A stretch of 64,000 bases of DNA, taken from positions 372,001-436,000 of the forward strand of contig NW_026782315.1 of NCBI RefSeq assembly GCF_031769215.1, in the 5' to 3' direction. The notes under the pieces are model-generated. The model was not told the origin of the DNA and ran no database searches. It was given only the letters and a program-made list of their open reading frames with translations. Each line of letters begins with the position of its first letter. The first letter of the stretch is position 1. Below are positions 1,277-64,000 of this stretch, in pieces. Position numbers and translations under genes: made by a program. The stretch comes from Ylistrum balloti. Taxonomy: Eukaryota.

Positions 1277-4200
1277 TAAATACATGTGATGAAAGCTTTT
1301 TTCTAAAAATAAAAACCTGCAAAGAACATGCATGAGCTACCACCCCATGGATTTAGCTTTTAGACAGACATGCTATCACTTATAAATATATATCACACAG
1401 CATCATTTTTTTTTCGAATATACATTGTTTTGGTTTCATCAAAAGTGACAACGAAAAATCGGGAAAGTGAGCCCTTGCAGGTCTAATATTTTACACAAAC
1501 ATACTTCATTATTAGAAAATGACAATCGTTAAACAATCGTACAGGTTGAAACACAAACGGATAATAAAGTATTTCAATATTTAGGTGTACCTAACAGTAA
1601 CGTTTTGTTATATAAGCCAGCATATTTACACAACTTCACAAGTTAACCTTCCTTGATAACAGTAAGATAATCCCTGTGTGCTTAAAGTGTATTATCACTG
1701 TGATAAAAATGTTCCCTATACATAAAGCACCTGGACTATGTACTTCAGAGCCTAGTCATCTTTATGATACATAATCACAAATAATAACCACCTTCCATTT
1801 TTACAGAAATCTTGCCATTCAGAATCAGGCCAGTTTTACCTGGATGATATTTGATAATCCAATGAAATACAGTTGATTGCTATTTTTCTAATATTTCTCA
1901 AGGACAGAATAAAAAATTCAAGTTAATGTAACATACCACATACCTAAGTAATAAAAGCAGCTTTCCTCTTTAGAATGGAATGTGAAGATAACATATAATT
2001 CATTATTTCTCAAAGTGTTTGCTCTTTGTTTTTCTAGATGGAAGACTGACATAATTGGTGATGGACAATTTTAGTGTAAATTTAACTTAAAGGAAGTCTG
2101 TGTAGAATGATCACTATTGACTTTCTCACAAAGGTACCCTTCATTGTACCTTCATCTCTGTGAACAAGTGATCATCAACAACACATAATCTCCTTTATCA
2201 TCTCATTATTTACAGATAAATTTAATATCCTGATTGCTGATATAATGCCCATCAACCAACATTATGACTTTCACATGGGATTGTCAGATAAAAACAATAC
2301 TTTCTATGCATATATATCTGTGTGTCTGATAGATGTGGGCATGTATATGGTGACCATGGAAATTATCTTGACGGGTCTGATACAAAATAAATATTCCTTC
2401 GAAAGTTTGAAGTCCCTTTAAACATTTCTGTTCATCTATCACAATAAAGTGTTAACATGCATATATTATACCTGTACTGAACAGTACTGTAACCCCTACC
2501 ATTTAAATCGACTGGGGGAGTCATTCTTTGGTGTATATGTATGTACAGTACACTGCATAGTCTCAAAAGTAGAGATAAATAGATTTGCTATCAATAATTT
2601 TTGAGAATTCAATATTTGAGACCTGGACTCATACTTTTCCTGTGAGGCTCATTCACATTATGAGAACCCCATACATCGCTTTGTAATGGGACATGTCAAA
2701 ATTTTAGAAATGGCAGGAGCTCTGGGCTCACAAAAAAAATCCTACAAAAATTGCTGGTTATTACTCTGGACCAGAAAATGTAGTTTTGGAAGTGGGTTTT
2801 TAGCAGGAGGAATAAGGTACTACACACTTAGTTGTACACTGTACATTTTGCTGTCCATCCAACATGTTAATTAGGTTTACATAGGTATCTTCATAGTCAA
2901 TCTATTGGGAAAAGTTGATGTAGCATATCATAGCCATTTAACAATGCATTTAATTGTTAAATTTCTGGGTGACCTGCCTATTTCAAGACACATATGACTA
3001 TACTTTATAAATTGTAATAAAAACCTTTCAACAAAACAAGTGATAAACAGAAGTACAAAACCTTAATGCACAGGTCCCAATTATTCACAGCTTGATTAAC
3101 CAGTGGTTAATGAAAATTTCAAAATATGAATCAAACATAATTAGCATATTCTTTATCATTTAATCTGATATGTTTTGTATGTCATTTGAACTTTGAAAGT
3201 GATTGGGTTTTTTATGGTAACAATTGAAACTTTTCATTAACCATTTAATAACTCCAACCAAGCCCTGATCATCTGGGGCCAAATATCAAAAGATGTAATA
3301 AATTTTAACCTACAGGTAATCAATATCGTAAAAGATGATATCATCTAATCTCGACTAAGATTTTAAAATATTAGACTGAGACACAAAACATACACAAATT
3401 AGATATATTTTCCACTTTAGTATATGGTAGACATAAAAGGTTTATGATCTAGACATATATATATCAATGTACACATAATTTCATTATTTTAACCAACAGA
3501 TGTTATAGACTTGTGTATAAGTTTAACCCTGAACAGGAAGTCCATCAGTATTTTGGGGTTCATTACAACATGAATCAGGGTTTATTTCTATAAGAAGGAT
3601 GTTGATATCTCTACACATACTAAATGTACTGCATGCTTCTCACATTTGGATCAGATCAAATAAAAAAGGGAGACTAATTTCCTCTATTAGGGTATATCTA
3701 ACATGTATTGAAGCAAAATCTTTTATTTACTTCTTCAGTTGTAACAATATTATACAAAGCAAAACGTGCAGAACAACAAATGTGCAGGGATTCTATAAAA
3801 TAATCTTTTATACACTATTGATTTTTTACATCAACTCTCAAACACAGGGACCAATTGTAATGCAACTAAAATTGCTAAACAATTGATATTCATGTATTTT
3901 TCTCTTGACACCATTTTGTACTGCTTGACCCCTGCATTATCCAACTAGAAAATGTCTATAAGGCAAGATAAGACCTTGTTCTCATGCATGTAAGTACATG
4001 TATCAATTTTTGAACAAATTTCTATATAAACGAATTGGTGACTTTGATCTTGAAACCCTGAATCTAAGATACTGTCACTGGTAAATTCTGCATAAAATTT
4101 TATCAAAATCCCTGAGGACAGACTGGGCAGGACAGACTGGGCAGGGCTGGGCAGGACATGGGTAAAACACTAATACTAATATTAACTGATGGGGGAAAAA

Positions 4201-35663: not shown

Positions 35664-37878
35664 ACATTGTTGCTTTGGTCAGTGTTTCCCTGGTAATGTG
35701 ACAGTGCTGTGTTGTTTTGGTCAGTATTTCCCTGGTAATGTGACAGTGCTGTGTTGTTTTGGTCAGTATTTGCCTGGTTATGTGACAGTATTGTGTTGTT
35801 TTGGTCAGTATTTCCCTGGTAATGTGACAGTGTTGTGTTGTTTTGTTCAGTGTTTCCCTGGTAATGTGACAGTGTTGTGTTGTTTTGGTCAGTGTTTCCC
35901 TGGTAATGTGACACTGACAGTGTTGCTTTGGTCAGTTTTTCCCAGGTAATGTGACAGTGTTGTGTTGCTTTGGTCAGTATTTCCCTGGTAATGTGACAGT
36001 GTTGTGTTGCTTTGGTCAGTATTTCCCTGGTAATGTGACACTGACAGTGTTGCTTTGGTCAGTATTTCGCTGGTAATGTGACAATGTTGTGTTGCTTTGG
36101 TCAGTATTTCCCTGGTAATGTGACAGTGTTGTGTTGTTTTGGTCAGTATTTCCCTGGTAATGTGACACTGACAGTGTTGTTTTGGTCAGTATTTCCCTGG
36201 TAATGTGACACTGACAGTGTTGCTTTGGTCAGTATTTCCCTGGTAATGTGACAGTGTTGTGTTGCTTTGGTCCGTATTTCCCTGGTAATGTGACACTGAC
36301 AATGTTGCTTTGGTCAGTATTTCCCTGGTAATGTGACACTGACAGTGTTGCTTTGGTCAGTATTTCCCTGGTAGTGTGACAATGTTGTGTTGCTTTGGTC
36401 AGTATTTCCCAGGTAATGTGACAGTGTTGTGTTGCTTTGGTCAGTATTTCCCTGGTAATGTGACAGTGTTGTGTTGCTTTGGTCAGTATTTCCCTGGTAA
36501 TGTGACACTGACAGTGTTGCTTTGGTCAGTATTTCCCTGGTAATGTGACAGTGTTGTGTTGCTTTGGTCAGTATTTCCCAGGTAATGTGACAGTGTTGTG
36601 TTTTGGTCAGTATTTCCCTGGTAATGTGACATTGACAGTGTTGCTTTGGTCAGTATTTCCCTGGTAATGTGACAGTGTTGTGTTGCTTTGGTCAGTATTT
36701 CCCTGGTGATGTGACACTGTTGTGTTTTGGTCAGTATTTCCCTGGTAATGTGTATTTCCCAGGTAATGTGACAGTGTTGTGTTGCTTTGGTCAGTATTTC
36801 CCTGGTAATGTGACACTGACAGTGTTGCTTTTGTCCGTATTTCCCTGGTAATGTGACACTGACAGTGTTGCTTTGGTCAGTATTTCCCTGGTAGTGTGAC
36901 AATGTTGTGTTGCTTTGGTCAGTATTTCCCTGGTAATGTGACAGTGTTGTGTTGCTTTGGTCAGTATTTCCCTGGTAATGTGACAGTGTTGTGTTGCTTT
37001 GGTCAGTATTTCCCTGGTAATGTGACAGTGTTGTGTTGTTTTGGTCAGTATTTCCCTGGTAATGTGACAGTGTTGTGTTGCTTTGGTCAGTATTTCCCTG
37101 GTAATGTGACAGTGTTGTGTTGTTTTGGTCAGTGTTTCCCTGGTAATGTGACACTGACAGTGTTGCTTTGGTCAGTATTTCCCTGGTAATGTGACAGTGT
37201 TGTGTTGCTTTGGTCAGTATTTCCCTGGTAATGTGACAGTGTTGTGTTGCTTTGGTCAGTATTTCCCTGGTAATGTGACAGTGTTGTGTTGCTTTGGTCA
37301 GTATTTCCCTGGTAATGTGACAGTGTTGTGTTGCTTTGGTCAGTATTTCCCTGGTAATGTGACAGTGTTGTGTTGCTTTGGTCAGTATTTCCCTGGTAAT
37401 GTGACAGTGTTGTGTTGCTTTGGTCAGTATTTCCCTGGTAATGTGACAGTGTTGTGTTGCTTTGGTCAGTATTTCCCTGGTAATGTGACACTGACAGTGT
37501 TGTTTTGGTCAGTATTTCCCTGGTAATGTGACAGTGTTGTGTTGCTTTGGTCAGTGTTTCCCAGGTAATGTGACACTGACAGTGTTGTTTTGGTCAGTAT
37601 TTCCCTGGTAATGTGACACTGACAGTGTTGTTTTGGTCAGTATTTCCCTGGTAATGTGACAGTGTTGTGTTGTTTTGGTCAGTATTTCCCTGGTAATGTG
37701 ACAGTGTTGTGTTGCTTTGGTCAGTATTTCCCTGGTAATGTGACAGTGTTGTGTTGTTTTGGTCAGTATTTCCCTGGTAATGTGACAGTGTTGTGTTGCT
37801 TTGGTCAGTATTTCCCTGGTAATGTGACAGTGTTGTGTTGCTTTGGTCAGTATTTCCCTGGTAATGTGACAGTGTTGT
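35664..37878. repeat. 2.2-kb minisatellite of mixed 42-bp (GTGACAGTGTTGTGTTGCTTTGGTCAGTATTTCCCTGGTAAT) and 43-bp units
   Basis: About 52 copies read directly; it accounts for all the repetitive ORFs in this interval. Confidence 0.97.
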
Positions 37879-50246: not shown

Positions 50247-51248
50247 AAGGGAAATAGAAATTGAGAATGGTGTCGAAACCGATGGGAAAGTTTGTTAAAC
50301 CTAATCAGTTTCTTTAGACACCAATCACTGAACGTAGAAATTTAAAAACTCACTGTGTCATGTGCGTGCATGTTCATCAGTCTTGCATTTGATGCAGTAG
50401 ATGTCGGTGTTCAATATTGATGACTGTCCTGTCGGGAGATATAAAGACATCCTGTGTCTATGATCCTGTGGTAACCCATTAGTGAAGGCCAGAGGTAACT
50501 GACATAGGGGCAGTAACACATTGGATGTTATCTTCTGATATTGTGTTGTGTACTTGGCAGTGCCAGCCATACATTTCAACCCCTTGTATATATATGATGT
50601 CAGCCAGGCATGACTGGAAGATGTGTACAACTGGCTAGCAAAAAGATATGATTGGAACTAAAAATATCACTGAAGGCTGCATACACAGCATCACCATCCA
50701 TCTTAGTCCCAGAGAAAACACGTGTATAGGGTTCCCTCACTGTAAGACTGAAACATATGTGTGATATATTTCTTTAGTATACATCTCTCCTGATAGACAA
50801 AAAATATCTTCAGAGTGAAGGCAACATAGGAGAGTTGTATTGGGTATTGTTGGTAGTTTGGATGTTGACCGGAGGTGATAGGGCAGAGAAGTGATCTCCA
50901 CCGGGAACATCACATATAAACTGACATTTCTCTGGCTCAGATGATAATGCTTCCAATAGGTGGAAGACTGCATCTTACAGAGGGGAAAAAATTTTCATTG
51001 ATTAATTGATTCCTGTATGTATAACAGGAATAGAATCGGCATAGATCCTGTTCACAGGGCAGGGAACTGTTTAGGCAGTAACTCTTACTGTAAAATTGTC
51101 ACTTTAGTTGGGAATACTAAAACAATCAGGAGCTGGCTAAGTACTGTACCATGAAAGTGCTCAGGAGCTTGTTTGAGCGCAATGTGCTTTGTCTGCGGAG
51201 GGGGCGCCTCATGAATGACATTGATGATGTTCTTGTGTCTGTCCCCAG

Positions 51249-51352
51249 ATCCGATCCCCAGAGTCGGCCAGACCCGGAGTACGAGGAAGAGGAAGAAGAG
51301 ATTTTGGGGTCCGATGATGATGAACAGGAGGACCCAGCTGATTACACAAAGG
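51249..51352 (+). CDS. SRPK: SRSF protein kinase, coding exon 3 (SDPQSRPDPEYEEEEEEILGSDDDEQEDPADYTKG)
   Basis: EEEILGSDDDEQEDPADYxKG is the SRPK signature. Acceptor gtgtctgtccccag (phase 2), donor AAGG|gtgagt (phase 1). Confidence 0.97.
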
Positions 51353-52161
51353 GTGAGTTCATTATAGGTAGAATGTAGATGTAGCAGGTAGTAATTCTGC
51401 TTCAGGAATTCCACATGTATACTTCTGTCTCACAGACAGCTCCAGACACTATCTTTGTAACTATATAGATTCTGTGTTTGGTATATCAATGATATCTTCA
51501 AAGACAAATGAATTTGCCTTGTAGTGTACATACCTCGTAGTGTACATGCATTTCTTGATGAAACATCTAATATCAGTTGGCCCTTTATGAATTGTTTTGC
51601 TATGTAGGTGTGGTCTTGCCTAAAACATTGACAGAATTTGGCGATTTCTTTTTATAAAACTATACAAATATCAATCAAATGATCATGAAAACAATTTTAA
51701 TTTTGTTGATGGGGGGGAAAAAAATTGAAACCTTTCTCTAGCTTTTAGATTCACCTTCTCTTGAAAAAGTCAATATATCTATTATGGATTCATTATTAAT
51801 GATTCATAGAATTCTGTTATTAAAAAGTCATAGTCTGCCTCTAAATTTACACTTGAAAATCTCTTGTGACACCAGATGTAAAAAAAGTATTGATTGGTTA
51901 GAATTTGCAGCTATCACATGTACCATAAATGTTTAGATGTATAACTTCTGAAGGAAGCCTGTAATTATGCCTTGTTAGCTGAGAGCAATAAGTGAGCAAT
52001 CTGTGGTTGTTTTTGTAGTGAATTAACAGAGAACACTGATACTTGAACTTGTGTATAGAAATTTACTTTGTATTAGGAGTATAAAGTACAATAATGCCGC
52101 CAAGTTCTAGTATTAATACACGATCAAGTACAATTGTACCATATAAATAAGTGTAAGGTAT

Positions 52162-53040
52162 TTACACCCACAGAAACACCATCAACGTACATAGGATCAG
52201 TAGTGTATCAGCTACATCACAATACAGAATAGTTACACCCACAGAAACACCATCAACGTACATAGAATCAGTAGTGTATCAGCTACATCACAATACAGAA
52301 TAGTTACACCCACAGAAACACCATCAACGTACATAGGATCAGTAGTGTATCAGCTACATCACAATACAGAATAGTTACACCCACAGAAACACCATCAACG
52401 TACATAGGATCAGTAGTGTATCAGCTACATCACAATACAGAATAGTTACACCCACAGAAACACCGCCACAATACAGGATAGTTACACCCACAGAAACATT
52501 GTCACAATACAGGATAGTTACACCCACAGAAACACCATCACAATACAGGATAGTTACACCCACAGAAACACCATCACAATACAGGATAGTTACACCCACA
52601 GAAACACCATTACAATACAGGATAGTTACACCCACAGAAATACCATCACAATACAGGATAGTTACACCCACAGAATCACCCTCACAATACAGGATAGTTA
52701 CACCCACAGAATCACCCTCACAATACAGGATAGTTACACCCACAGAAACACCATTACAATACAGGATAGTTACACCCACAGAATCACCCTCACAATACAG
52801 GATAGTTACACCCACAGAAACACCATTACAATACAGGATAGTTACACCCACAGAATCACCCTCACAATACAGGATAGTTACACCCACAGAAACACCCTCA
52901 CAATACAGGATAGTTACACCCACAGAATCACCCTCACAATACAGGATAGTTACACCCACAGAAACACCATTACAATACAGGATAGTTACACCCACAGAAT
53001 CACCCTCACAATACAGGATAGTTACACCCACAGAAACACC
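52162..53040. repeat. Compound minisatellite: four 71-bp units followed by about 16 related 36-bp units
   Basis: TTACACCC period is 71 from 52162 and 36 from about 52446. Confidence 0.95.
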
Positions 53041-53499
53041 ATGAATGTACACAGGATGAAGTATTCTGTACTATTTATATATGGTATAGTTATATATTAA
53101 ATGTTGAAAGAGTTACAATATAGAGTATATCATTTGGTGAAGAGTGTTGATGTACCTAAGGGTTAGAGTACAATACGTTTACATCATGTACTAACACAAA
53201 AGTCCAAGCTAAAAACATCTCCCAGGCCCCTGAATTGAATAAGGTTAACTCAATAATAATGACAAAATCAATAATCTTTGCTATATTTGTCATGAATTTT
53301 TTATTGTTAACATTTTAAAATGTTTTATCTATCTACATATTTTTAGTCCATTTTTGTAATCATTTCCAGTGCTTCCTTTATGTGATGAAAGGAATTATAC
53401 TCTTTCTGCATTGCATTGCTGTAGTGTAAAAATGTCATGAAAATGTGTCCTAAATTTGCTTGTTACTTTAGTAGTCATGAATGAAAGGAAGTAAAACTC

Positions 53500-53670: not shown

Positions 53671-56600
53671 CATTAAAATCTGTATTTACTGTTATATGCT
53701 GATTTCTTTATTAAAAAGTTTTAAATGTACAAAAATTGAATGATTCTGCAAAAGATTCCTTTGTATCATCTGTTTGACATGAAAGGACATGTAAAGTCTG
53801 CCAATTTCATTGATATACATGATGAAACAATACATCGCTAGATTTTCTATATAGACACCTGATCATGAACTTGTCTGATACTAGAACATGTATTGGTATA
53901 GTATTGGCTAATATCAATTTGATACATTGTGATTATTTCCATGGCAATTAACCAACATTTGGTATGCCAGGTAATTTCCTGTCAGTAAAACAGGGGACTT
54001 TGTAAGACTGGCTGAAGTGGTCCGTTACATGACAATATGTATTGTTAGTATTTTTAGTGGCCATCATATTTCCGGTAGATAACATTATTGGGGACTAATT
54101 CTGGCCAGCCCTATAGCTATTAAAGGACATCCTATTGTGTTGTTTGATACTGAACGGATTTCCACCTTATTATTTCCAATGAAAACAACCAGAGAATCTC
54201 TATTTCATCCAGAGCTTAGCCATTACAGGCATTCTTTAATTGTGTTTGCCTGAGGTTGGATTATTAGGTGTTCATTCCATTTGCTTTGATGTCATTATAG
54301 GTTTGACCAGCACCTCCTCTCTCCCACCCTCTTCTATCCCTCTATCACAACAATATATGATCCAGCAGTTCATTCTTGCCTTAAACAATGTACCATGCCT
54401 CATTTCAATACTTGTATTATTGAATACATATCATAAGTTGTATTGCCCCGTGGACTTTGTAAGGTCTAGCTTGTAGTTCAAGGTGAGATTCGAGACCTTC
54501 ACCTTACTTGATGTTATAATAAAGAAAAATAGTAACGTATGCCAAGGAATGATGTACAAAGAATTCCTTAGATTTATTTAATTTATATGGGTTTAATTAA
54601 AGTTTTCTTTGATACTAGTACGTATGTGAGAATACTTCAGTAATTTTATTTTATTTTTCTCTCTTTCTCTCTCATAGATATTAAATAACTATATCATGAA
54701 GTGTCTGTAAATGGGTGCATGCATCAGGTATTGAATACATTCTTCTTACACTCTATATCAATATTTATCAGGCAGCAATACTCATTTCTATATCAGGATG
54801 TATCTGGGCGGTGTAGTTCTCATTAAATAGATGTAGAGATGAGTTCTATATGGAGAATGGAAAATTATATCAATATTTTAGTGCTTGTTGGTTTATATTG
54901 ATAAGAAGAGTGTTATGGATTTGTCTGAAGTTTAGAATATGCTTGGCAATTGAATGACTTGACCTACAGCATAGCGTTTGGGTTTGAGAATGCGAAGATG
55001 TTTACATGGCAAAACAGGGTTATCAAGCCACCACGGGAAAAAATGAAGATGTTGAAAAAATGGTAGCATTTTCACGGTTGGATAAAGGAAAGATAAACAG
55101 TGACATTTTACATACAACAAATTTGATTAACTGTAGAAGTAAATTCTTGGAGAAAAGGGGAGTTCCAATAAAGACAAATCATCAAAATTATCAGCTACAC
55201 CCATTTGAAATGAAAGCTGCGTCAAGACTTAAAGTTGATTTAAACTTTTCCACTGAGTGTCGGAATAAATCAATAATCTTGTGGCAAATGGTAAGAATTT
55301 TAAGTAGAAATAAGACACATTCATAGATTTTCTTGTCTCATTAAATCTTTTAGGAGATCTTTTACCTGGAAATCGCAGCCCCCTGAACAAATTAGAATTT
55401 AAGTGATGTATGATGGGCAATATCAAGAGATTTAATCATGAATTTACTCTGATCGGTTTAGGAACCCCATAATTTGCAGAATAGTTCAAAATGGAATTGG
55501 CAAAACCAGAAGAATGATTTATGGTGTGTACTTGTTGGGGTAAGCCGGATGATGAGTTTGACTTTGTTGAACCTTGAATGAATTACATTCGACTTGCCTG
55601 TGATGAAGTAAAGGAAATATTGGTCTGCTGGGACTTTAGTTTCCGACTTGATAATCTTCACAAAATGTTTGTGTGAACAGTTTATGTAATGAATATCTGT
55701 ACAACTTTGAAATTGAAAGCTCCCTACTGGTGAGATTTTAATCGATTGCATGAAGTTCTGAAATAAAAATCATATCTATTCAAAATCAAAAGTAGTTTTA
55801 AAATGTGTGCTTATGTAATGTTAAGTTAAGGTAGCAGTAACTTACAGGGTAATGTATGGGCATTCCAGTGGACATTAAAGCAAGGGCTGTTTTGAGTGAA
55901 ATTTCTCAATTTAAGATCTCTCTAAAGATAAGCCAGAATTAATTGAATTCTTAGATGTAACAACAATTTTCAGGAAATTTTGAAATAAGGATTGATGCAA
56001 CCATTTAGTCCATTTCAAATATATTTTTTTTTGTCTGGTAGAAATTTTATGTGAGCTTGACCAAGCAAGTGATGATGCATAAATATATGATAAAAAGTAG
56101 AAAAACACACCTCTGTTTTGGTTTGTGTTAACCCAACAAATGTCTATTCCAAAGGGTGATAATCTGATACCTTCCTCCCCCATTTCGTTTTCTCAGGCAG
56201 TTTATCAACATGCAGTTTTCTGCAGCACCTCTCAGTAAAGGTATAGTGTTAGGACTTGCAGGGACATCATGGGCAGATCATGTGTCATGGTATTGATTAG
56301 AATAGTGTTTTAATTTAAATACCTACTTTATCCAGCAGGGATTTCAGACTTGGTTATAAAAGGTAATCAAGAAAACACATTTCATCAAAAACCGGAATGC
56401 AAGCATACACTGTTGTTTCTACCTCAGACCTTGACATCTGGTACTATGAGGTCTCTTGGGCCTTAAACCAAAGGTTCATGAAGAGAAATCATATAAATTG
56501 GTATAACAAATATGCTGCTATGACCAACAAGTGTGTTGCTACCAAAATGGAGTTGCTTCAAACTGATATTTTCATAAGGCTCAATTTTTGTGGATTTAAA

Positions 56601-58157
56601 AAAAAAAAGAATTATTTAGTAGACACCTGAAATCTGCTTATAGTAATTTTAATATTTTGTGGACATATGAATTCATTGATTTAGAGTATCTGTGAAACAT
56701 ATGGGAGAAAAAAACAATGAGAATACATACTAAAGGATAAACAAGGACTATTATACTTTTTCCCATAAGGGTTTTGAGTGGCAATTAGCACAGTAAGCTA
56801 AGGTTATATTGAAAGTCAGTCTATATAAAGTGTATCATTTTAGAGACCTACTAACATATAGAAAACTAAGCTTCAGGAATATAAGGAAATGTTTTCATTA
56901 TTTCTATTCCTAAGACTGGGAATTAACAGTTTTATAGTTGGTGTTCCTTTATATGATGTAAAGGCAGTACAAAGTTGATAATAGGCTGTTTTTTTGTCAG
57001 CTACCAGCTTTCAATGGAATAAAACAGTCCCATCAGTGATAAATCTACAGGCAAGTCCCGAGTTCTGTACTCATAGAATTTCCTGGGATTCATAGAATTT
57101 CTATACTTTAATTTTACATCCATCGAACCGATTGTTTTTAGCAAGAAATGTGAAAAAATCCACAAGAAAATACATTGTAGATTGATCACTGAGTCCATTA
57201 TTGGAAAGTCCAAACCTCCGATAGGTCATTAGAATGGAGGTATTGCCTTCAGATAAAAGAAGACCTAATATACTGACCACTATAATGATATGGTCTTTTA
57301 ATGAAGGTATAATTAGCCTGGCTAATAATAAGCAAGGTCACAGATAGGTTTTATCACTTGTGAATGGACACTGACAAGAAATGACCCTTGTTTGTCCTTA
57401 CCATTCAGTCCATAAATCTGTCAAACTGGACAGGACAAGATCCAGTTGTTTATACCTGTACAGGTGAAAGTGTGTTATGGTGCATTGTGATGTGATAAGT
57501 GGAATACATATCTATGTATATATATATATATCTCCAAACACTGTAATGACAAAATCATGCTGAAGGTTGCAAGGTTCAGTTATATACAGGAAATTTGGAC
57601 CTCTTATGAATTGGCTCTTGATTTGTGGCTGGTGTGGAACAGTGTTATATCTGCAGTAAATTGCTGTTGAATTGTGGAAAAAGAAATCTTAATCTATAGA
57701 TTAAGGCATCTGTGATCTGGATATATTGTAGTGCTTTCATATCACAGGAATGAACAATTCATTTGATTTACAGAAGAACAGATTGTGTGGAGTTAGCCCC
57801 AACATTCAAGGGGAAATTATCTCCAAACCACAGGCTTGAAACTTAAATGGTGCCTTAGATGACTTCTAGTTTTGTTGAAAATGTAAATCATCGGAGTATT
57901 GAATGACAGAGTTACAGATCTGGTGTGTATCTGATAATATCAACTTTTTAATGAAATGGTATAATTCTTTGTAATAGCAATTTGTTTTGTTCTTATTTTG
58001 AGACATATCAATAAAAAGTAGGAGTGCTTTCACATTTACTTCTTGTATAAGTAAATTCAGTGACAGTCCAGAAGTATGGAATTCTTGAATGGACAGTTTA
58101 CATGAAAGGTTTCCTCATAATTTTGACATGCTTTCCCACTAAACAAAAGTTTTAACC

Positions 58158-59418
58158 ATGGAGAATTACAGGAAATCTGTTAACCATGATTCGTACACTG
58201 ACTACCGCATGCATGTGTATGGTGTAACCCCATTGTACCCAGTCAGCGGATCTTATGCTCCAGTGATGGTCAAGAATCCTGGCCCCAAAATGGAGCCAAA
58301 AAATTCATCTGGCAATAGACAGTGCACACTGGAGAATTCTTCAGCCTGCAAAGCATACTTACAACCCAGACTATACAATATGGAGACTATAACTATCATT
58401 AGACCAGGACAGAGGGAGCAACATAAAGCTGATACCATACATCATCACTGTCACAGACCAAGAGCTTTATATAAAGGTGAAACACAATATCCCCATAAGA
58501 CTGCAGAGCTACAGTGCAAGGAAAACCATAACAAAACATCTACCAAAGTCCATGATGTAGCATCAGCCCAAGTAACAGAGCATGTTGAAAGATGGAAAGA
58601 CGGAATGGTTTCCCAAAGGAATGGAAAGCTGAAACCCCAGAGGTCATTTAAACCTTTCGATGTCATCAGTAACTTTATCAGCAAGACCAGAAAACACCGA
58701 ACAAAAGAATGTAAAAACAGTCAGAAAAATGGTTGTAAGAGGAATGTTCAAGATAGGAATCATGGAATTTTTCATAGCACTGATGGTGGACGTTCGTCCC
58801 ATCCCATGGTTGACAGGGATACCATTGCTGAGATCTTTAAGCATTGTAAAGTAAAAACTGGACAACTGCAATGTAGTCAAAGTAACCAAAACAAAGTATC
58901 CACACAAACTGAATACAATATTGATGTGAAAGATGGCCAAATTTGTTTTAAAAACGCCAGGGAGGATATAGCTGGTCAGTCTAGGTTGTTGACGTCCCAA
59001 GGATTGAGTAACCCTTGGCAGGCTGCAAGGATCCCCAGTGGTCAGCTACAGGAGACCGTGAGGTACAAGAACCATGTTTCTCGATACTTTCAGAAAGCAT
59101 CTTCTCGTGTTAGGTCAAAGGACATAAAGCTTGAGAACCTATGGAGCATGCATTCTGCTGATCAAGATTACTGGACCTACTCCGACGTTCAAAAAGAAAA
59201 ATTACAGAACTCATTTAATCAGGAGAATATTGTGCAGAAAGGGCATATTTCAGATCACCGTCTGACTTTGTGTAGAGTAGAATCTTCCCAGAGGCTGAAT
59301 TTGAGTGAACGATTGCATGAACTGCCTATTCAGAAAAACTATGTGATGAACAAATTCTTGTGTGATGTCCATCACATCAACAGTAAAAAGGGTCAGTTGT
59401 CTGGTGTCCAAGGACAAG
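58158..59418 (+). CDS. Large candidate alternative first (or cassette) coding exon of SRPK, about 420 codons of K/Q/S/N/H-rich sequence with no recognised domain; alternatively a 437-aa single-exon nested gene (58158-59471)
   Basis: 1314-nt uninterrupted ORF in AT-rich intron DNA, Kozak ACCATGG, and donor CAAG|gtaaga at 59419 in phase 1, which matches the acceptor of the kinase exon at 63186. Confidence 0.7.
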
Positions 59419-62400
59419 GTAAGACTCATGACATTGTTGACCCTTTCTGTTACTTCATCCTTGGAACATGATTCTCGGGCACTATTCCAAATTGTCATCA
59501 CTGTCTGGAAGGATTTGTTGGCAAGAAGTTGGACCTTTAATTGAAAATGTTGATAAAGATTTACTTTTCCTGAACTCTGCTTGTCTAAATGACATGATCA
59601 TGTGGAAAGTAAATTTTCAGTATACTGACTTAATGTTACTGTTTTTAGAAATATAGCAGGCCAATGTTCTGTTTCTGAAATAGAGCTCTGTATTATATGA
59701 TACATATCTTGCATTGATGTTTTTCTTACATTAAACATAATGGCAGAAATGACAAAAAAGTATGTTTTTATAAATCCTATGTTTGGGCATTTGAATGGTA
59801 ATATAAAGATGAAAAGTGAGATGGACTTAACAAAGAAAGGACTTATCAGTAAGAGTCTTTCCCTGAAAATGTACAAAATAACTGGAACTCTATTTGAATT
59901 GAAGAAAGCCCAATCCTTCTTGAAAAATCCTGCAAGATAACAATAAGTTATGTTTCACAAGCAAATGAAACATGAAATACAAAATTTCATAGTTCTGTTA
60001 TGTTTTTGATCCCTGATTTTGCTAACAAACAGATGATTGAACAGCATTGTGACAGCTTTGATCAAGAATAACTTCATCATCACTAAAGCCAGTGATGCCC
60101 AATCAGCTATTGGACAGTCTCAAAAGAAATTTGGTTGTTCTGAATGAGTAGTTTGGGAAGTTGGACTTGAAATAACTCCAAACATTGGAAATAGTTAAGT
60201 CTGATTACATACTTACAGAATCTATTACTGGTGTTTGACCGAATTATTTGCTGGTAGCTAGCAGCCCAATTGGGTATTAGTCAGATTGATTCTTCTGTAC
60301 AGACAAGTGTAGCCAGAGGTTGGCAGCCTGACCCTGCTCATTTGTTGTTTGCCTATCCAATAATAAGATAAGTTGTTGGTCAAGCTGATTTCTGGCCAGA
60401 ATTGAGGTCAGAAGAATTGGTGTGGTCATCCATAATCCTGGACTCTACGTTCACTCAACATTAATGAATTTTCTCTGCCATGACAGAGCAATGGTCAGTT
60501 TAACGTGACAGTAACCATCAATTCTGGTAATGGGCAGTGCTTCATTGTTTATGTGTACTCCAATACTAGCTCCAGTGTTTTGTTTATATTTGTTGCAAGA
60601 AGGGAATCTCCAGGGAATGCTCATGTAAAAAATTTGGGGATAATGATTTTTCTGTTTGAAATTTTATAGCACAACTTAGCTTCTGTTATCAAATCAGTGG
60701 TGCAGTTATAACATATGATATGGATTCCGTTTGAAAATGATAACTCAAAAATTTTGATCAATAAAGTAGGATCATTGAAAAAAAACTGATGGCCAGTGAT
60801 GGGAGTATTATTTTGTGTTGTACTGAATACTGATGCCTGCTGTGTAGATGCTGAAACTCAATGTCTTCCCAAAAACATAAATGTTGCCTTCATTTTAATT
60901 TGATGGACAATAGATTAAAAATTTCAAGTTGTCCAACTGCATAGGCAAAACAAGTTAAGGTGTTATTCAATTGAACAATAATGACAGGTACAGAAAAACA
61001 GGACCAATGTGTGGAACATGTTGGAGATTGTCTGTCCTAGCTGTACATCTCCACATTTAGAACTCTACCAGAGTAATACTATAGTTGTGCATTGTGTCTG
61101 TTGATCCTTCTATCCTTCTATCCATCTTTTCACTATTTTGTCCAGGCTCTATCTCCTACACTACTTGTCACTGGAATTTTATGATTCACCTTGGTGAGGC
61201 AATGTGTCATGTATCATAAGTAAGCCACATTTACCTCTGTCAAATCGAAAGATTTGTTTTAAATATAACGTCACATTTCGTGAATTATCTTGTTTCTTGT
61301 GAAATTGACACAAACACATATTTCAGAAAATATTTTTTTGTTAACCACAGGAGATTAAGAAATATGAAGAAAAGTATAAATTAATATTTGACCTATGAGA
61401 CCACATTTTGAGCTCTGCTTTCATAACCATTTTCATATCAGGTTCATTTGTGTGTACTGCAGAATATTTCAACTGGGCTACACAAAAGCAATGAGTAGGC
61501 TGCTTGTTTAAACATCTTCATGCAAAGACGAAGTTTGTTATAAAACATTGTTTCCCCTGCTGTTCACCTCAAGTGCTCTAAAATCCTTTAACTATCAGGA
61601 CAGTTCTGCTGAATCAACATTATTTTACTGATGTCTTCACTTTTCCTGAAGAATTCTGTCTGCCATTGATTTTACTGTTGTCTTCAGAAATATCCTAGAC
61701 AGTGCTTACACATTGAAGCATTGTTTTATAGCTATACATGATTATTCCTTGTCTGTGACTACCTATTACATATCTTTAGATACAGATTTTCTCTATTTGA
61801 CAAGACTGGAATTATATCACTGAATCTGATGGAAATTTTGCATGATTCCATCTATCAGTGAATTTAAATCTAAACACAAAAATATTTGAATTTGAATTTT
61901 ATCAAAACAATAATGATATAAACAATAATAATATGAATCTCACAGTTTTTTTTATGTGATCTAATCGTAATTTTGTAATGACAATGAGATCAGTATATCT
62001 GTATTGTTTCATTATACAAGTACCAGCACAACAACGAGAAGTAAAGACAGTTTTGAATTTTACTGGAAAGTCAATTGATTCAAAGAAGAATTATTGGAGT
62101 GTGGTTCATTCATTAACTGTTAGGACCTGTTGAGAAAGTGATTAGGTATTACTCCTACTCCATACTAACTCTGACATTTAGATGTTAATGCAGCTATATG
62201 GCACAAATGGGACACTCGATTATTCCCACATCTGATTAACCAAATGGTTATAATAGGACCCATTTCACAATTCACCACATGTTAGATCTTAGGCAGAAAC
62301 TCTTACATTCTTATGGACTGACAAAAGTCTGTATTGACAGTTGTTGGGTCAGATTTCATGAAATTAGATTTTGAATTTAAATCATAATAAATATTACCAT

Positions 62401-63154
62401 TCCCATATAAAATGGTCATGATGTCCAAGTGAGTAGGAATGGGCTTATGAGCAAATCTGCCCTGTTTATTCTGAAATTCAGACTCAAGTCGGGTATGGGC
62501 TTATTTCAGAACTTAATTTAGATTTAGTTTATTATCAAACATGAACTTACGGCTTAGGTATTTGATCAAACTGTTGGGATATCCGATTCACCTATCAAAG
62601 AACAAAGCATGTTTTGTATCACTGGTTAGAGTTAATGCATTTTAGCCTTTGGGGAAAGATACTCACTTAACTCAATAGAAGTTTAAGCAGTCATGTCAGC
62701 TGCTGGAACCTTTCCCAAGGTCGAGAGAATCATATTCTGAAAATAAGATTACATAATCCCAGCATATAACGATTAATTTTTATGAAAGTCGTTTCCAATA
62801 TCATTAGCATTAATAGATACATTGTGATATACAGATGCAACACAAATTAACAGAACAAAACAGATTTGTCCAATATTAATTCAGAGTGTTCATGACTTAA
62901 TTATGAAATCATATTAAAATATAGATGTAATTGCTTGGATGATTTTAGAGCAGAATTTTCACTGGTTACTTCCATTTATGACTTATTCTGACTAATCTTA
63001 GTTAAGTCATTGGACTGTTTCATTTCTCTGTTGGATTTTGAAGCTGTTTTAGCGAAACAAAACATGCATTTGCACATGCACAAAAAAATTTTCTATGCAT
63101 TAAATTGTTTGAATGCAATACTTGTAAGAAGAATAGAAGAAAAAAAATTGTTAA

Positions 63155-63295
<141 letters not shown>

Positions 63296-64000
63296 TAAGT
63301 ATGGAAGCATGATGGGGACACACAGGCATAGAAATGCATAGTCAGGATTAAATTCAAGTGTTAGCAACATGGAATATGTTCCTAAATCTTGTAAAAATTA
63401 ATTAGATGATGTGAAGAGCAATGCAGTTGATTATCCATGTGTAAAAATATGTAGTTTTACCTGTGTAAACAATGTGATATTTGGTGATTTAGAAGGAAAA
63501 ATTTGAAATGTATGGATTTCAAATTGCAAAAATTTTTAACAAAGTTGGACATCTATACTGTGTTAATTAATGACTAGTAATGATCATTGTATTCTTAATT
63601 GAGGCATGGAAAAATGTCAGGGATAAATTTTTGTTCGCTCTTTTCGTGGAAAAATGCGAGACTTCTGTTTAAAATGTATTTGAAACCTACCAATTAGCGT
63701 TTTGTTCTAGTATATTACATTTGATTTATTTCTTAAACAAATTTTAATGATGGAAATGATTCATAAAAGCTTCAGGATCAGCTAGTGCTCTCTATCTGGA
63801 AGATACAATTGCATTGTTGTTATGTAATGGTGCAAACTAAAAACCTTCTCACTGATGTTTTACAGATAGGTTTTCAAATCGATTTAGAAAGTTTGTGCCC
63901 TGAAATTTGTCTTTCGTGGCTAAGGACAGTGTATGTGGTAGTTTAATGATGTTTATGTGATAATGAATCCATGTAATAAATTCCTCTGCTCGTTATGTGG

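What the first reader, a model, noticed from the sequence alone, without database searches (positions are those of the whole stretch)
58150..59471. Giant hidden exon: a ~420-residue alternative N-terminus for SRPK
Seen: the only long non-repetitive ORF in the window (437 codons) lies sense within SRPK intron 3 and starts at ACCATGG. It has a consensus donor CAAG|gtaaga 53 nt before the end of its stop codon, in exactly the phase needed to give ...[20 protein letters not shown].... A weak phase-1 acceptor (aaaag|tt, 58150) would alternatively make it a symmetric 1269-nt cassette. The peptide is K/Q/S/N/H-rich with scattered Cys and no transposon or other motif I recognise. Established: SRPK non-kinase regions control localisation and partner binding, and the EEILGSDDDEQED-DY segment of exon 3 is deeply conserved. 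Inference: a lineage-specific, probably tissue-restricted (for example germline) isoform replaces that conserved segment with a long, largely disordered domain.
Basis: partly seen in the sequence, partly recalled or inferred. Interest (0 to 1): 0.76.

Follow-up and report, generated by a model that had tools for sequence, protein, structure and literature searches.

The report
Conserved alternative N-terminal exon in SRPK
A 420-codon stretch inside an intron of a scallop-like bivalve's SRPK kinase gene is real, selected protein-coding sequence shared with the bay scallop, and most likely an alternative first exon that gives the kinase a long disordered N-terminus, though no RNA data were available to prove the splice.

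Summary
ORF 58158-59471 (+, 437 codons) is single-copy and has no Pfam family. It lies sense in the 11.8-kb intron between the first coding SRPK exon (ATG 51151, ends 51352) and the exon that starts the kinase core (63186).

It is real coding sequence. Its only relative among 1.84 billion representative proteins is a 509-aa 'uncharacterized protein' of Argopecten irradians, which sits in the same SRPK intron. dN/dS is 0.33 (bootstrap 0.24-0.45) at dS about 1.

Constraint begins at a conserved ACCATGG. It ends at a conserved GG|GTAAG donor, 420 codons from the ATG and in phase 1 in both species. That phase matches the acceptor at 63186. Both flanks align no better than shuffled sequence.

Best reading, about 0.55: an alternative-promoter first coding exon that replaces the 67-residue acidic N-terminus with a basic, disordered 420-residue one, as in Drosophila SRPK79D. 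Main rival, about 0.33: an independent nested gene, which is how A. irradians annotates it.

The only run that held the sequence was genomic DNA, so the splice junction is untested. Any tissue restriction is also untested.

The parts
51151..51352 (+). Canonical first coding exon of SRPK (from the ATG): MKVLRSLFERNVL...EEILGSDDDEQEDPADYTK+G, 67 codons plus 1 nt. The donor G|GTGAGT is phase 1. This is the segment the alternative exon would replace.
   Evidence: conserved in A. irradians L003 around 3623-3677
57334..57454 (.). Single-copy conserved non-coding block about 750 nt upstream of the ORF's ATG (78% identity to A. irradians). Candidate regulatory element for the alternative transcript (inferred).
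57920..57990 (+). Patchily conserved stretch with a shared TATAA (57960-57964), 170-240 nt upstream of the ATG. Candidate core promoter (inferred only).
   Evidence: alignment, columns 700-770
58158..59418 (+). Proposed alternative first coding exon: ACCATGG start, 420 codons plus 1 nt, ending CAAG| in phase 1. Basic (pI 9.6), hydrophilic, predicted disordered. Conserved islands at residues 19-34, 94-131, 144-176, 252-265, 298-331 and 383-407.
59419..59424 (+). Splice donor GTAAGA (A. irradians GTAAGC). The GG|GTAAG core is identical in both species.
59419..59471 (+). Read-through tail to the TGA stop (17 codons). It is not conserved, and identity to A. irradians falls to the shuffled level here.
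63186..63294 (+). SRPK exon entered in phase 1 ([37 protein letters not shown]), the start of the kinase core. Crystallised SRPK1/2 constructs begin at or about here.
   Evidence: downstream kinase exons found at window-equivalent 65-86 kb

Best explanation
The stretch 58158-59418 is an alternative first coding exon of the SRPK gene. A transcript starts at an internal promoter in the large intron after the canonical ATG exon. Translation starts at the conserved ACCATGG. The conserved phase-1 donor at 59418 is joined to the constitutive acceptor at 63186. The product is a full SRPK kinase of roughly 1,050-1,060 residues, judged from the 708-aa A. irradians product. Its 67-residue acidic N-terminus (EEILGSDDDEQED) is replaced by a 420-residue basic, mostly disordered region carrying about eight short conserved motifs. 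By analogy with SRPK79D, this region would redirect localisation or partner choice without touching the catalytic core. Shown here: the sequence is coding and under purifying selection; its position is syntenic; the start, donor and phase are conserved; constraint is confined to ATG..donor. Inferred: the splice itself, the promoter and the function.
For: The ORF is single-copy in the 648-Mb genome at DNA and protein level. Its only relative is P0001 of A. irradians at 47-51% identity. P0001 lies in the same SRPK intron, between the EEILGSDDDEQED exon and the GYHPVKIGD exon. dN/dS is 0.33 (bootstrap 0.24-0.45), dS about 1.0, and third-position identity is 59% against 70-71% at positions 1 and 2. 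All indels are in frame. Both species have 420 codons from the ATG to a GG|GTAAG donor in phase 1. That phase matches the acceptor at 63186. The most conserved protein block (residues 383-407, 85% identity) lies just before the donor. Directly after the donor, and directly before the ATG, identity equals the shuffled baseline: 0.60-0.63 against 0.72-0.73 inside the ORF ends. The read-through tails differ in length (17 and 88 codons) and are unrelated. The window has no AATAAA for 1.3 kb after the donor. Exon 63186 is where solved SRPK kinase-core constructs begin, so the swap leaves the fold intact. Precedent exists: SRPK79D alternative promoters give non-conserved N-termini that carry targeting information (PMC2759580), and human SRPK1a carries a 171-aa N-terminal insertion (PMC6624410).
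Against: There is no transcript evidence. The only public run holding the stretch is colinear genomic DNA. No protein fragment spanning the junction exists in the protein collections, although a full-length isoform of about 1,060 aa would fall outside the word search's length range. The A. irradians annotation calls the ORF a separate 509-aa single-exon gene, and its longest SRPK product is 708 aa. The A. irradians read-through tail stays open for 88 codons, P about 0.001 by shuffling, and this is unexplained. Only two species could be compared. A conserved block at 60142-60528 contains a conserved ...TCTGTACAG|AC that could in principle be a competing acceptor.
Confidence: 0.55

Rival explanations
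1. An independent orphan protein-coding gene is nested, on the sense strand, in the SRPK intron. It is either single-exon, ending at the TGA at 59469-59471, or two-exon, using the 59418 donor and a small terminal exon inside the intron. It has its own promoter and poly(A) site and no protein-level link to SRPK.
For: A. irradians annotators model it as a separate single-exon gene of 509 aa, and their longest SRPK product (708 aa) lacks it. It has its own conserved Kozak ATG with in-frame stops just upstream in both species. The 88-codon open tail in A. irradians is unlikely by chance. A conserved block 60142-60528 with a conserved pyrimidine-rich ...CAG| lies downstream of the donor.
Against: For the single-exon form, conservation stops at a consensus donor straight after the best-conserved motif. 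The two C-terminal tails are unrelated and differ in length. No conserved poly(A) signal follows, and the window has no AATAAA for 1.3 kb. A sense-strand poly(A) site in the intron would also truncate canonical SRPK transcripts (inference). For the two-exon form, the 60142-60528 block has indels of 1, 2, 4 and 9 nt and no codon periodicity. In phase 1 it gives 9 codons in the window against 32 in A. irradians (read by eye). No other conserved candidate exon lies between 59419 and 63185.
Confidence: 0.33
2. It is a 1269-nt symmetric cassette exon (58150-59418) included between the canonical N-terminal exon and the kinase exon. This would insert about 423 residues rather than replace the N-terminus.
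For: In the window, AG at 58148-58149 lies after the in-frame TAA at 58140-58142. Both ends would be phase 1, so the reading frame would stay open.
Against: The acceptor is weak, with a purine-rich tract (actaaacaaaag). In A. irradians there is an in-frame TAA at -27 and no AG between it and the ATG, so the ORF cannot be entered in frame from upstream. Sequence upstream of the ATG is at the shuffled level of identity.
Confidence: 0.05
3. It is not a functional coding unit: a chance ORF, a decaying transposon or retrocopy remnant, or a pseudogene.
For: It has no Pfam family, no fold and only one relative. Polymorphism in a second individual is 5 nonsynonymous to 2 synonymous, with SNP density similar to the intron.
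Against: The ORF is four times longer than the mean longest shuffled open run. It is kept open over 420 codons in two species at dS about 1 with dN/dS 0.33. It is single-copy with no parent gene or paralogue in the genome. No stop-gain is seen in the second individual.
Confidence: 0.05

Closest known systems
Drosophila SRPK79D PC/PF versus PB/PE isoforms (PMC2759580)
   Same: It is an SRPK-family gene. Alternative promoters and translation starts give long, non-conserved N-terminal domains fused to the same kinase core, and the N-terminus carries targeting information (active zone versus perikaryon).
   Different: No sequence similarity to the scallop exon was detected. The fly isoforms are proven by RT-PCR and transgenes. 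Here the splice and promoter are inferred from two genomes only.
Human SRPK1a (171-aa N-terminal insertion by a retained intron; PMC6624410, citing Nikolakaki et al. 2001)
   Same: Extra coding sequence is drawn from an intron at the 5' end of an SRPK gene. It lengthens the non-catalytic N-terminal region and is variable between species.
   Different: SRPK1a is an insertion that keeps the original start. The scallop exon has its own ATG and would replace the acidic EEILGSDDDEQED segment. The sequences are unrelated.
Argopecten irradians 'uncharacterized protein' P0001 (509 aa, GCA_041381155.1)
   Same: It is the orthologue: 47-51% identity over residues 1-420, in the same SRPK intron, on the same strand, with the same ATG context, the same donor and the same phase.
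   Different: It is annotated as a stand-alone single-exon gene that reads through the donor for 88 further codons. Those codons have no counterpart in the window.

Membership tests
Alternative first coding exon of SRPK (alternative-promoter N-terminal isoform) | Lies inside the SRPK gene on the sense strand, upstream of the kinase-core exons | tested here: met
Alternative first coding exon of SRPK (alternative-promoter N-terminal isoform) | Own start codon, and a donor whose phase matches the next constitutive acceptor | tested here: met
   ACCATGG; phase-1 donor at 59418; phase-1 acceptor at 63186
Alternative first coding exon of SRPK (alternative-promoter N-terminal isoform) | Exon boundaries (start, donor, phase) and coding constraint conserved in another species, with constraint ending at the donor | tested here: met
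   A. irradians L003
Alternative first coding exon of SRPK (alternative-promoter N-terminal isoform) | Transcripts that join the exon to the kinase exons (junction 59418^63186) | not testable with these tools
The only run found (X1) is genomic DNA contigs.
Alternative first coding exon of SRPK (alternative-promoter N-terminal isoform) | Own transcription start inside the intron | not testable with these tools
   Only a conserved TATAA-containing stretch at 57920-57990 and a conserved non-coding block at 57334-57454
Independent nested gene | Conserved stop codon or C-terminus, and a poly(A) signal within the host intron | tested here: not met
   The tails are unrelated (17 and 88 codons). There is no AATAAA in 59419-60759.
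Independent nested gene | Modelled as a separate gene in a related annotated genome | tested here: met
   A. irradians annotation
Transposon- or retrocopy-derived ORF | Multiple copies or a parent gene in the genome; transposase, RT or other mobile-element domains | tested here: not met
   One DNA match and one protein match, both to itself. No Pfam family at E<=1.
TEX33 / CIMIP4 (PF15400) | Match to the Pfam model or significant sequence similarity | tested here: not met
   The Atlas feature score of 0.76 is within the noise range. There is no PF15400 hit at E<=1 and no PDB hit to sperm microtubule inner proteins.

The most novel reading that the evidence does not exclude
A pectinid-specific orphan coding sequence with no detectable relatives outside scallops has been recruited as an alternative 420-residue N-terminus of SRPK. 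It has been kept for the whole divergence of the two genera (dS about 1). Through its eight short conserved motifs it retargets a splicing-factor kinase to a new compartment or substrate set. This would be an invertebrate counterpart of the SRPK79D active-zone isoform, built from unrelated sequence.
Probability: 0.2. Interest if true: 0.6.

Novelty: new variant of a known kind. Interest (0 to 1): 0.4.

Why it matters
SRPKs are conserved regulators of SR-protein phosphorylation, and their non-catalytic regions decide where and on what they act. A selected 420-residue alternative N-terminus would triple the non-kinase part of the protein and remove the conserved acidic segment, so it should change localisation or partners. 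It would correct the gene models in at least two scallop genomes, where the exon is either unannotated or called an orphan gene. It would also give a clean case of lineage-restricted coding sequence attached to an ancient kinase. If it proves instead to be a nested orphan gene, it is still a conserved, unannotated or mis-terminated protein-coding gene.

Tried and rejected
RNA evidence. The look-up of sequencing runs (kind rna) returned one run only. Read laying showed it to be colinear genomic contigs with no joints at 59418 or 63186. It gave only 7 SNPs in the ORF (5 nonsynonymous, 2 synonymous, no stops), too few to be informative.

Homology searches:
- Pfam: nothing.
- Word search with the whole ORF: P0001 only.
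- Word search with the last 121 residues, aimed at short transcript fragments that might cross the junction: nothing.
- Exhaustive phmmer against 1.84 billion representatives: P0001 only.
- Exact-product look-up of the window ORF: not on record.
- PDB profile search: only a weak uL15 match at E=0.3.
- ESM Atlas: best hit TEX33/CIMIP4 at 0.76, inside the noise range.

Structure. AlphaFold2 with the two-sequence alignment gave mean pLDDT 30. No fold search was run, because matches to such a model would be meaningless.

Other checks. Rfam on 51-64 kb gave no family. The bacterial-type promoter and terminator scan does not apply to a eukaryote and was below shuffle expectation. Earlier scan findings by words gave nothing.

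Step left out. The joined (spliced) protein was not built or searched. For this reason a full-length long isoform of about 1,060 aa in other annotations could not be sought with the length-limited word search.
Full report
**1. The observation**

The window holds an ATG-initiated ORF at 58158-59471 on the + strand, 437 codons, in the context ACCATGG.
- It is the longest ORF in the window.
- The two ORFs of 181-225 aa at 52.4-53.0 kb are open on both strands because they lie in a 36-bp tandem array of 21 copies.
- Within the host intron the longest stop-free run is 442 codons. In 200 shuffles of the intron the mean maximum was 107 and the highest 158.
- G+C rises to 0.40-0.42 over the ORF, against 0.30-0.35 on either side.

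The host gene is an SRPK.
- The exon ending at 51352 encodes MKVLRSLFERNVL...EEILGSDDDEQEDPADYTK, from an ATG at 51151. It ends G|GTGAGT in phase 1.
- The exon starting at 63186 (ttacag|GGGGATACCAT) encodes [37 protein letters not shown].
- That exon matches the first residues of crystallised SRPK1, SRPK2 and Sky1 kinase cores at E down to 9e-22.
- Further kinase exons lie downstream of the window on the same contig (ALKVVKS, MVFEVLG, IIHTDIKPEN, KIADLGNACW, TEDIQTRQYR).

The donor CAAG|GTAAGA has its last exon base at 59418, 53 nt before the end of the stop codon. It is in phase 1, so joining it to 63186 would read ...SGVQGQ-G-GYHPVK. The intron number could not be checked.

**2. It is real coding sequence, not a repeat**

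The ORF matches only itself in the 648-Mb assembly, both as DNA and as protein in six frames. This excludes a transposon family, a paralogue and a retrocopy with a surviving parent. It has no Pfam family at E<=1.

The word-index protein search found one relative, P0001, an 'uncharacterized protein' of 509 aa from Argopecten irradians (E 3e-94, 47% identity, 97% of the query). An exhaustive phmmer scan of 1.84 billion representatives found the same single protein and nothing else at E<=0.001.

A codon alignment of the 420 codons up to the donor gave the following.

| Measure | Value |
|---|---|
| dN | 0.34 |
| dS | 1.02 |
| dN/dS | 0.33 (bootstrap 95% 0.24-0.45) |
| Identity at codon positions 1 / 2 / 3 | 70% / 71% / 59% |

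All eleven indels are in frame. An ORF kept open over 420 codons in two lineages with saturated synonymous sites is under purifying selection.

**3. Synteny and the limits of constraint**

In A. irradians the orthologue lies at L003:10001-11530. It sits on the same strand as a gene whose product is a 708-aa protein kinase, and inside that gene. It lies between the EEILGSDDDEQEDPADYTKG exon (about 3623-3677) and the [14 protein letters not shown] exon (about 13918). This is the same intron as in the window.

Both species have the following.
- ACCATGG at the start.
- An in-frame stop shortly upstream, at -18 in the window and -27 in A. irradians.
- Exactly 420 codons from the ATG to a GG|GTAAG donor in phase 1.

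The BLASTP alignment ends at G-Q-G-K-x-H, which is the donor consensus read as codons.

Global alignments of 150-nt segments give the identities below.

| Segment | Identity | Shuffled mean |
|---|---|---|
| First 150 nt of the ORF | 0.72 | 0.585 |
| Last 150 nt before the donor | 0.73 | 0.602 |
| The two 150-nt segments upstream of the ATG | 0.60-0.61 | about 0.60 |
| The two 150-nt segments after the donor | 0.61-0.63 | 0.60-0.62 |

The best-conserved protein block, SERLHELP(I/V)QKNYVMNKFL.DVHHI at residues 383-407, lies just before the donor. After it, the read-through tails are 17 codons in the window and 88 in A. irradians. They share nothing at protein level. Selection therefore acts on ATG..donor and stops there, which is the signature of an exon boundary rather than a C-terminus.

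**4. Which transcript?**

This is possible only in the window species. In A. irradians there is no AG between the in-frame TAA at -27 and the ATG, so the frame cannot be entered from upstream. Translation must begin at the ORF's own ATG, so the exon is most simply a first coding exon with its own promoter.

Upstream there is a single-copy conserved block at 57334-57454 (78% identity). There is also a patchily conserved stretch with a shared TATAA at about 57960. These are candidate regulatory sequences, by inference only.

Downstream of the donor, the only conserved block before exon 63186 is 60142-60528.
- It is single-copy.
- Its indels (1, 2, 4 and 9 nt) and lack of periodicity argue against coding.
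- Its core carries TGTTTGC, CCAAT and AGATAAG motifs.
- It does contain a conserved ...TCTGTACAG|AC. In phase 1 this would add 9 codons in the window and 32 in A. irradians before a stop, as read by eye. A small competing terminal exon therefore cannot be excluded.

The window has no AATAAA between 59419 and 60759.

**5. Transcript evidence: none obtainable**

The single run that holds the stretch consists of contigs colinear with the genome across 57600-63599, at depth about 11. It is genomic DNA from another individual.
- It carries seven SNPs in the ORF: five nonsynonymous, all in poorly conserved parts, and two synonymous. There is no stop, and the ATG and donor are unchanged.
- A word search with the last 121 residues, meant to catch short transcript-derived fragments crossing the junction, found nothing.
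- For that reason a long isoform of about 1,060 aa in other annotations lies outside the length range of the word search.
- Such an isoform could also be hidden behind a canonical representative in the 50%-clustered library.

**6. The protein**

Residues 1-420 are basic (pI 9.6) and hydrophilic (GRAVY -1.0), and rich in S, K, Q, N, R and H.

AlphaFold2 with the two-sequence alignment gives mean pLDDT 30. It shows only four short helices (168-178, 220-228, 297-313, 393-405). Three of them (168-178, 297-313, 393-405) fall on conserved islands; 220-228 does not. This fits a disordered region with short linear motifs, with the caveat that the alignment is very shallow. No fold search was run on such a model.

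Two weak leads are treated as noise.
- The Atlas look-alike (TEX33/CIMIP4, 0.76) is inside the noise range and has no Pfam support.
- The match of residues about 300-331 to uL15 has E=0.3.

**7. Mechanism and rivals**

| Reading | Confidence |
|---|---|
| Alternative-promoter first coding exon spliced 59418 to 63186 | about 0.55 |
| Independent nested orphan gene | about 0.33 |
| Cassette exon | about 0.05 |
| Non-functional remnant | about 0.05 |

In the best reading, the 67-residue acidic N-terminus is swapped for a 420-residue basic disordered one on an intact kinase core.

The nested-gene rival has three points in its favour.
- The A. irradians annotators model it that way, and their longest SRPK product lacks it.
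- The A. irradians read-through tail is open for 88 codons, P about 0.001 by shuffling. This is unexplained under either reading, because the tail is not conserved.
- The block at 60142-60528 could hold a terminal exon.

Three points count against the nested gene.
- Conservation collapses abruptly at a consensus donor.
- The C-termini are unrelated and no conserved poly(A) signal follows.
- A sense-strand poly(A) site would also cut canonical SRPK transcripts (inference).

**8. Comparison with what is known**

SRPK genes are known to vary their N-termini.
- Drosophila Srpk79D uses two promoters and translation starts. Its non-conserved N-terminal domains decide whether the kinase goes to active zones or stays in the perikaryon (PMC2759580).
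- Human SRPK1a carries a 171-aa N-terminal insertion from a retained intron, variable among mammals (PMC6624410).

The scallop exon would work like the SRPK79D case. Its sequence is unrelated to either precedent, and it is more than twice the length of the SRPK1a insertion. It is therefore a new variant of a known kind, not a new kind.

**9. Verdict**

The coding status and conservation are firmly established. The isoform reading is favoured but unproven for lack of RNA data. Interest is moderate.

Noticed in passing
window 53935-54165, 54859-54914, 55263-55575, 57334-57454, 60142-60528: Blocks in the SRPK intron are conserved with A. irradians at 67-81% identity, higher than the coding ORF's 65%. 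The three searched in the genome (55263-55575, 57334-57454, 60142-60528) are single-copy. In the two aligned in detail, the indels are not multiples of three. The core of 60142-60528 carries TGTTTGC, CCAAT and AGATAAG motifs. These are probably intronic enhancers.
   Followed up: partly
window 52162-53042: Tandem arrays with a 71-bp unit (4.3 copies) and a 36-bp unit (21 copies). They create stop-free frames on both strands, which are the 181-225-aa 'ORFs' at 52375-53052.
   Followed up: yes
L003:11262-11530 (A. irradians): The read-through frame after the conserved donor stays open for 88 codons (P about 0.001 in shuffles), although it is unrelated to the window's 17-codon tail. Only an 11-nt island, GGATTTGTTGG, is shared (window about 59505).
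   Followed up: partly
window 59055-59150 (ORF residues about 300-331): The conserved motif RYK.HVSRYFQK.SS.VRSK...LE.LWSM weakly resembles ribosomal protein uL15 residues 58-89 (E=0.3 against the PDB). This is probably chance.
   Followed up: no
window 36483-37491 (-): Two adjacent ORFs of 223 and 120 aa on the minus strand have no Pfam family above threshold. Their nature was not examined.
   Followed up: partly
window 50585-51358: An 806-nt block is conserved with A. irradians at 74%. It extends about 570 nt upstream of the canonical SRPK ATG at 51151, so the canonical 5'UTR or promoter may lie directly there.
   Followed up: no
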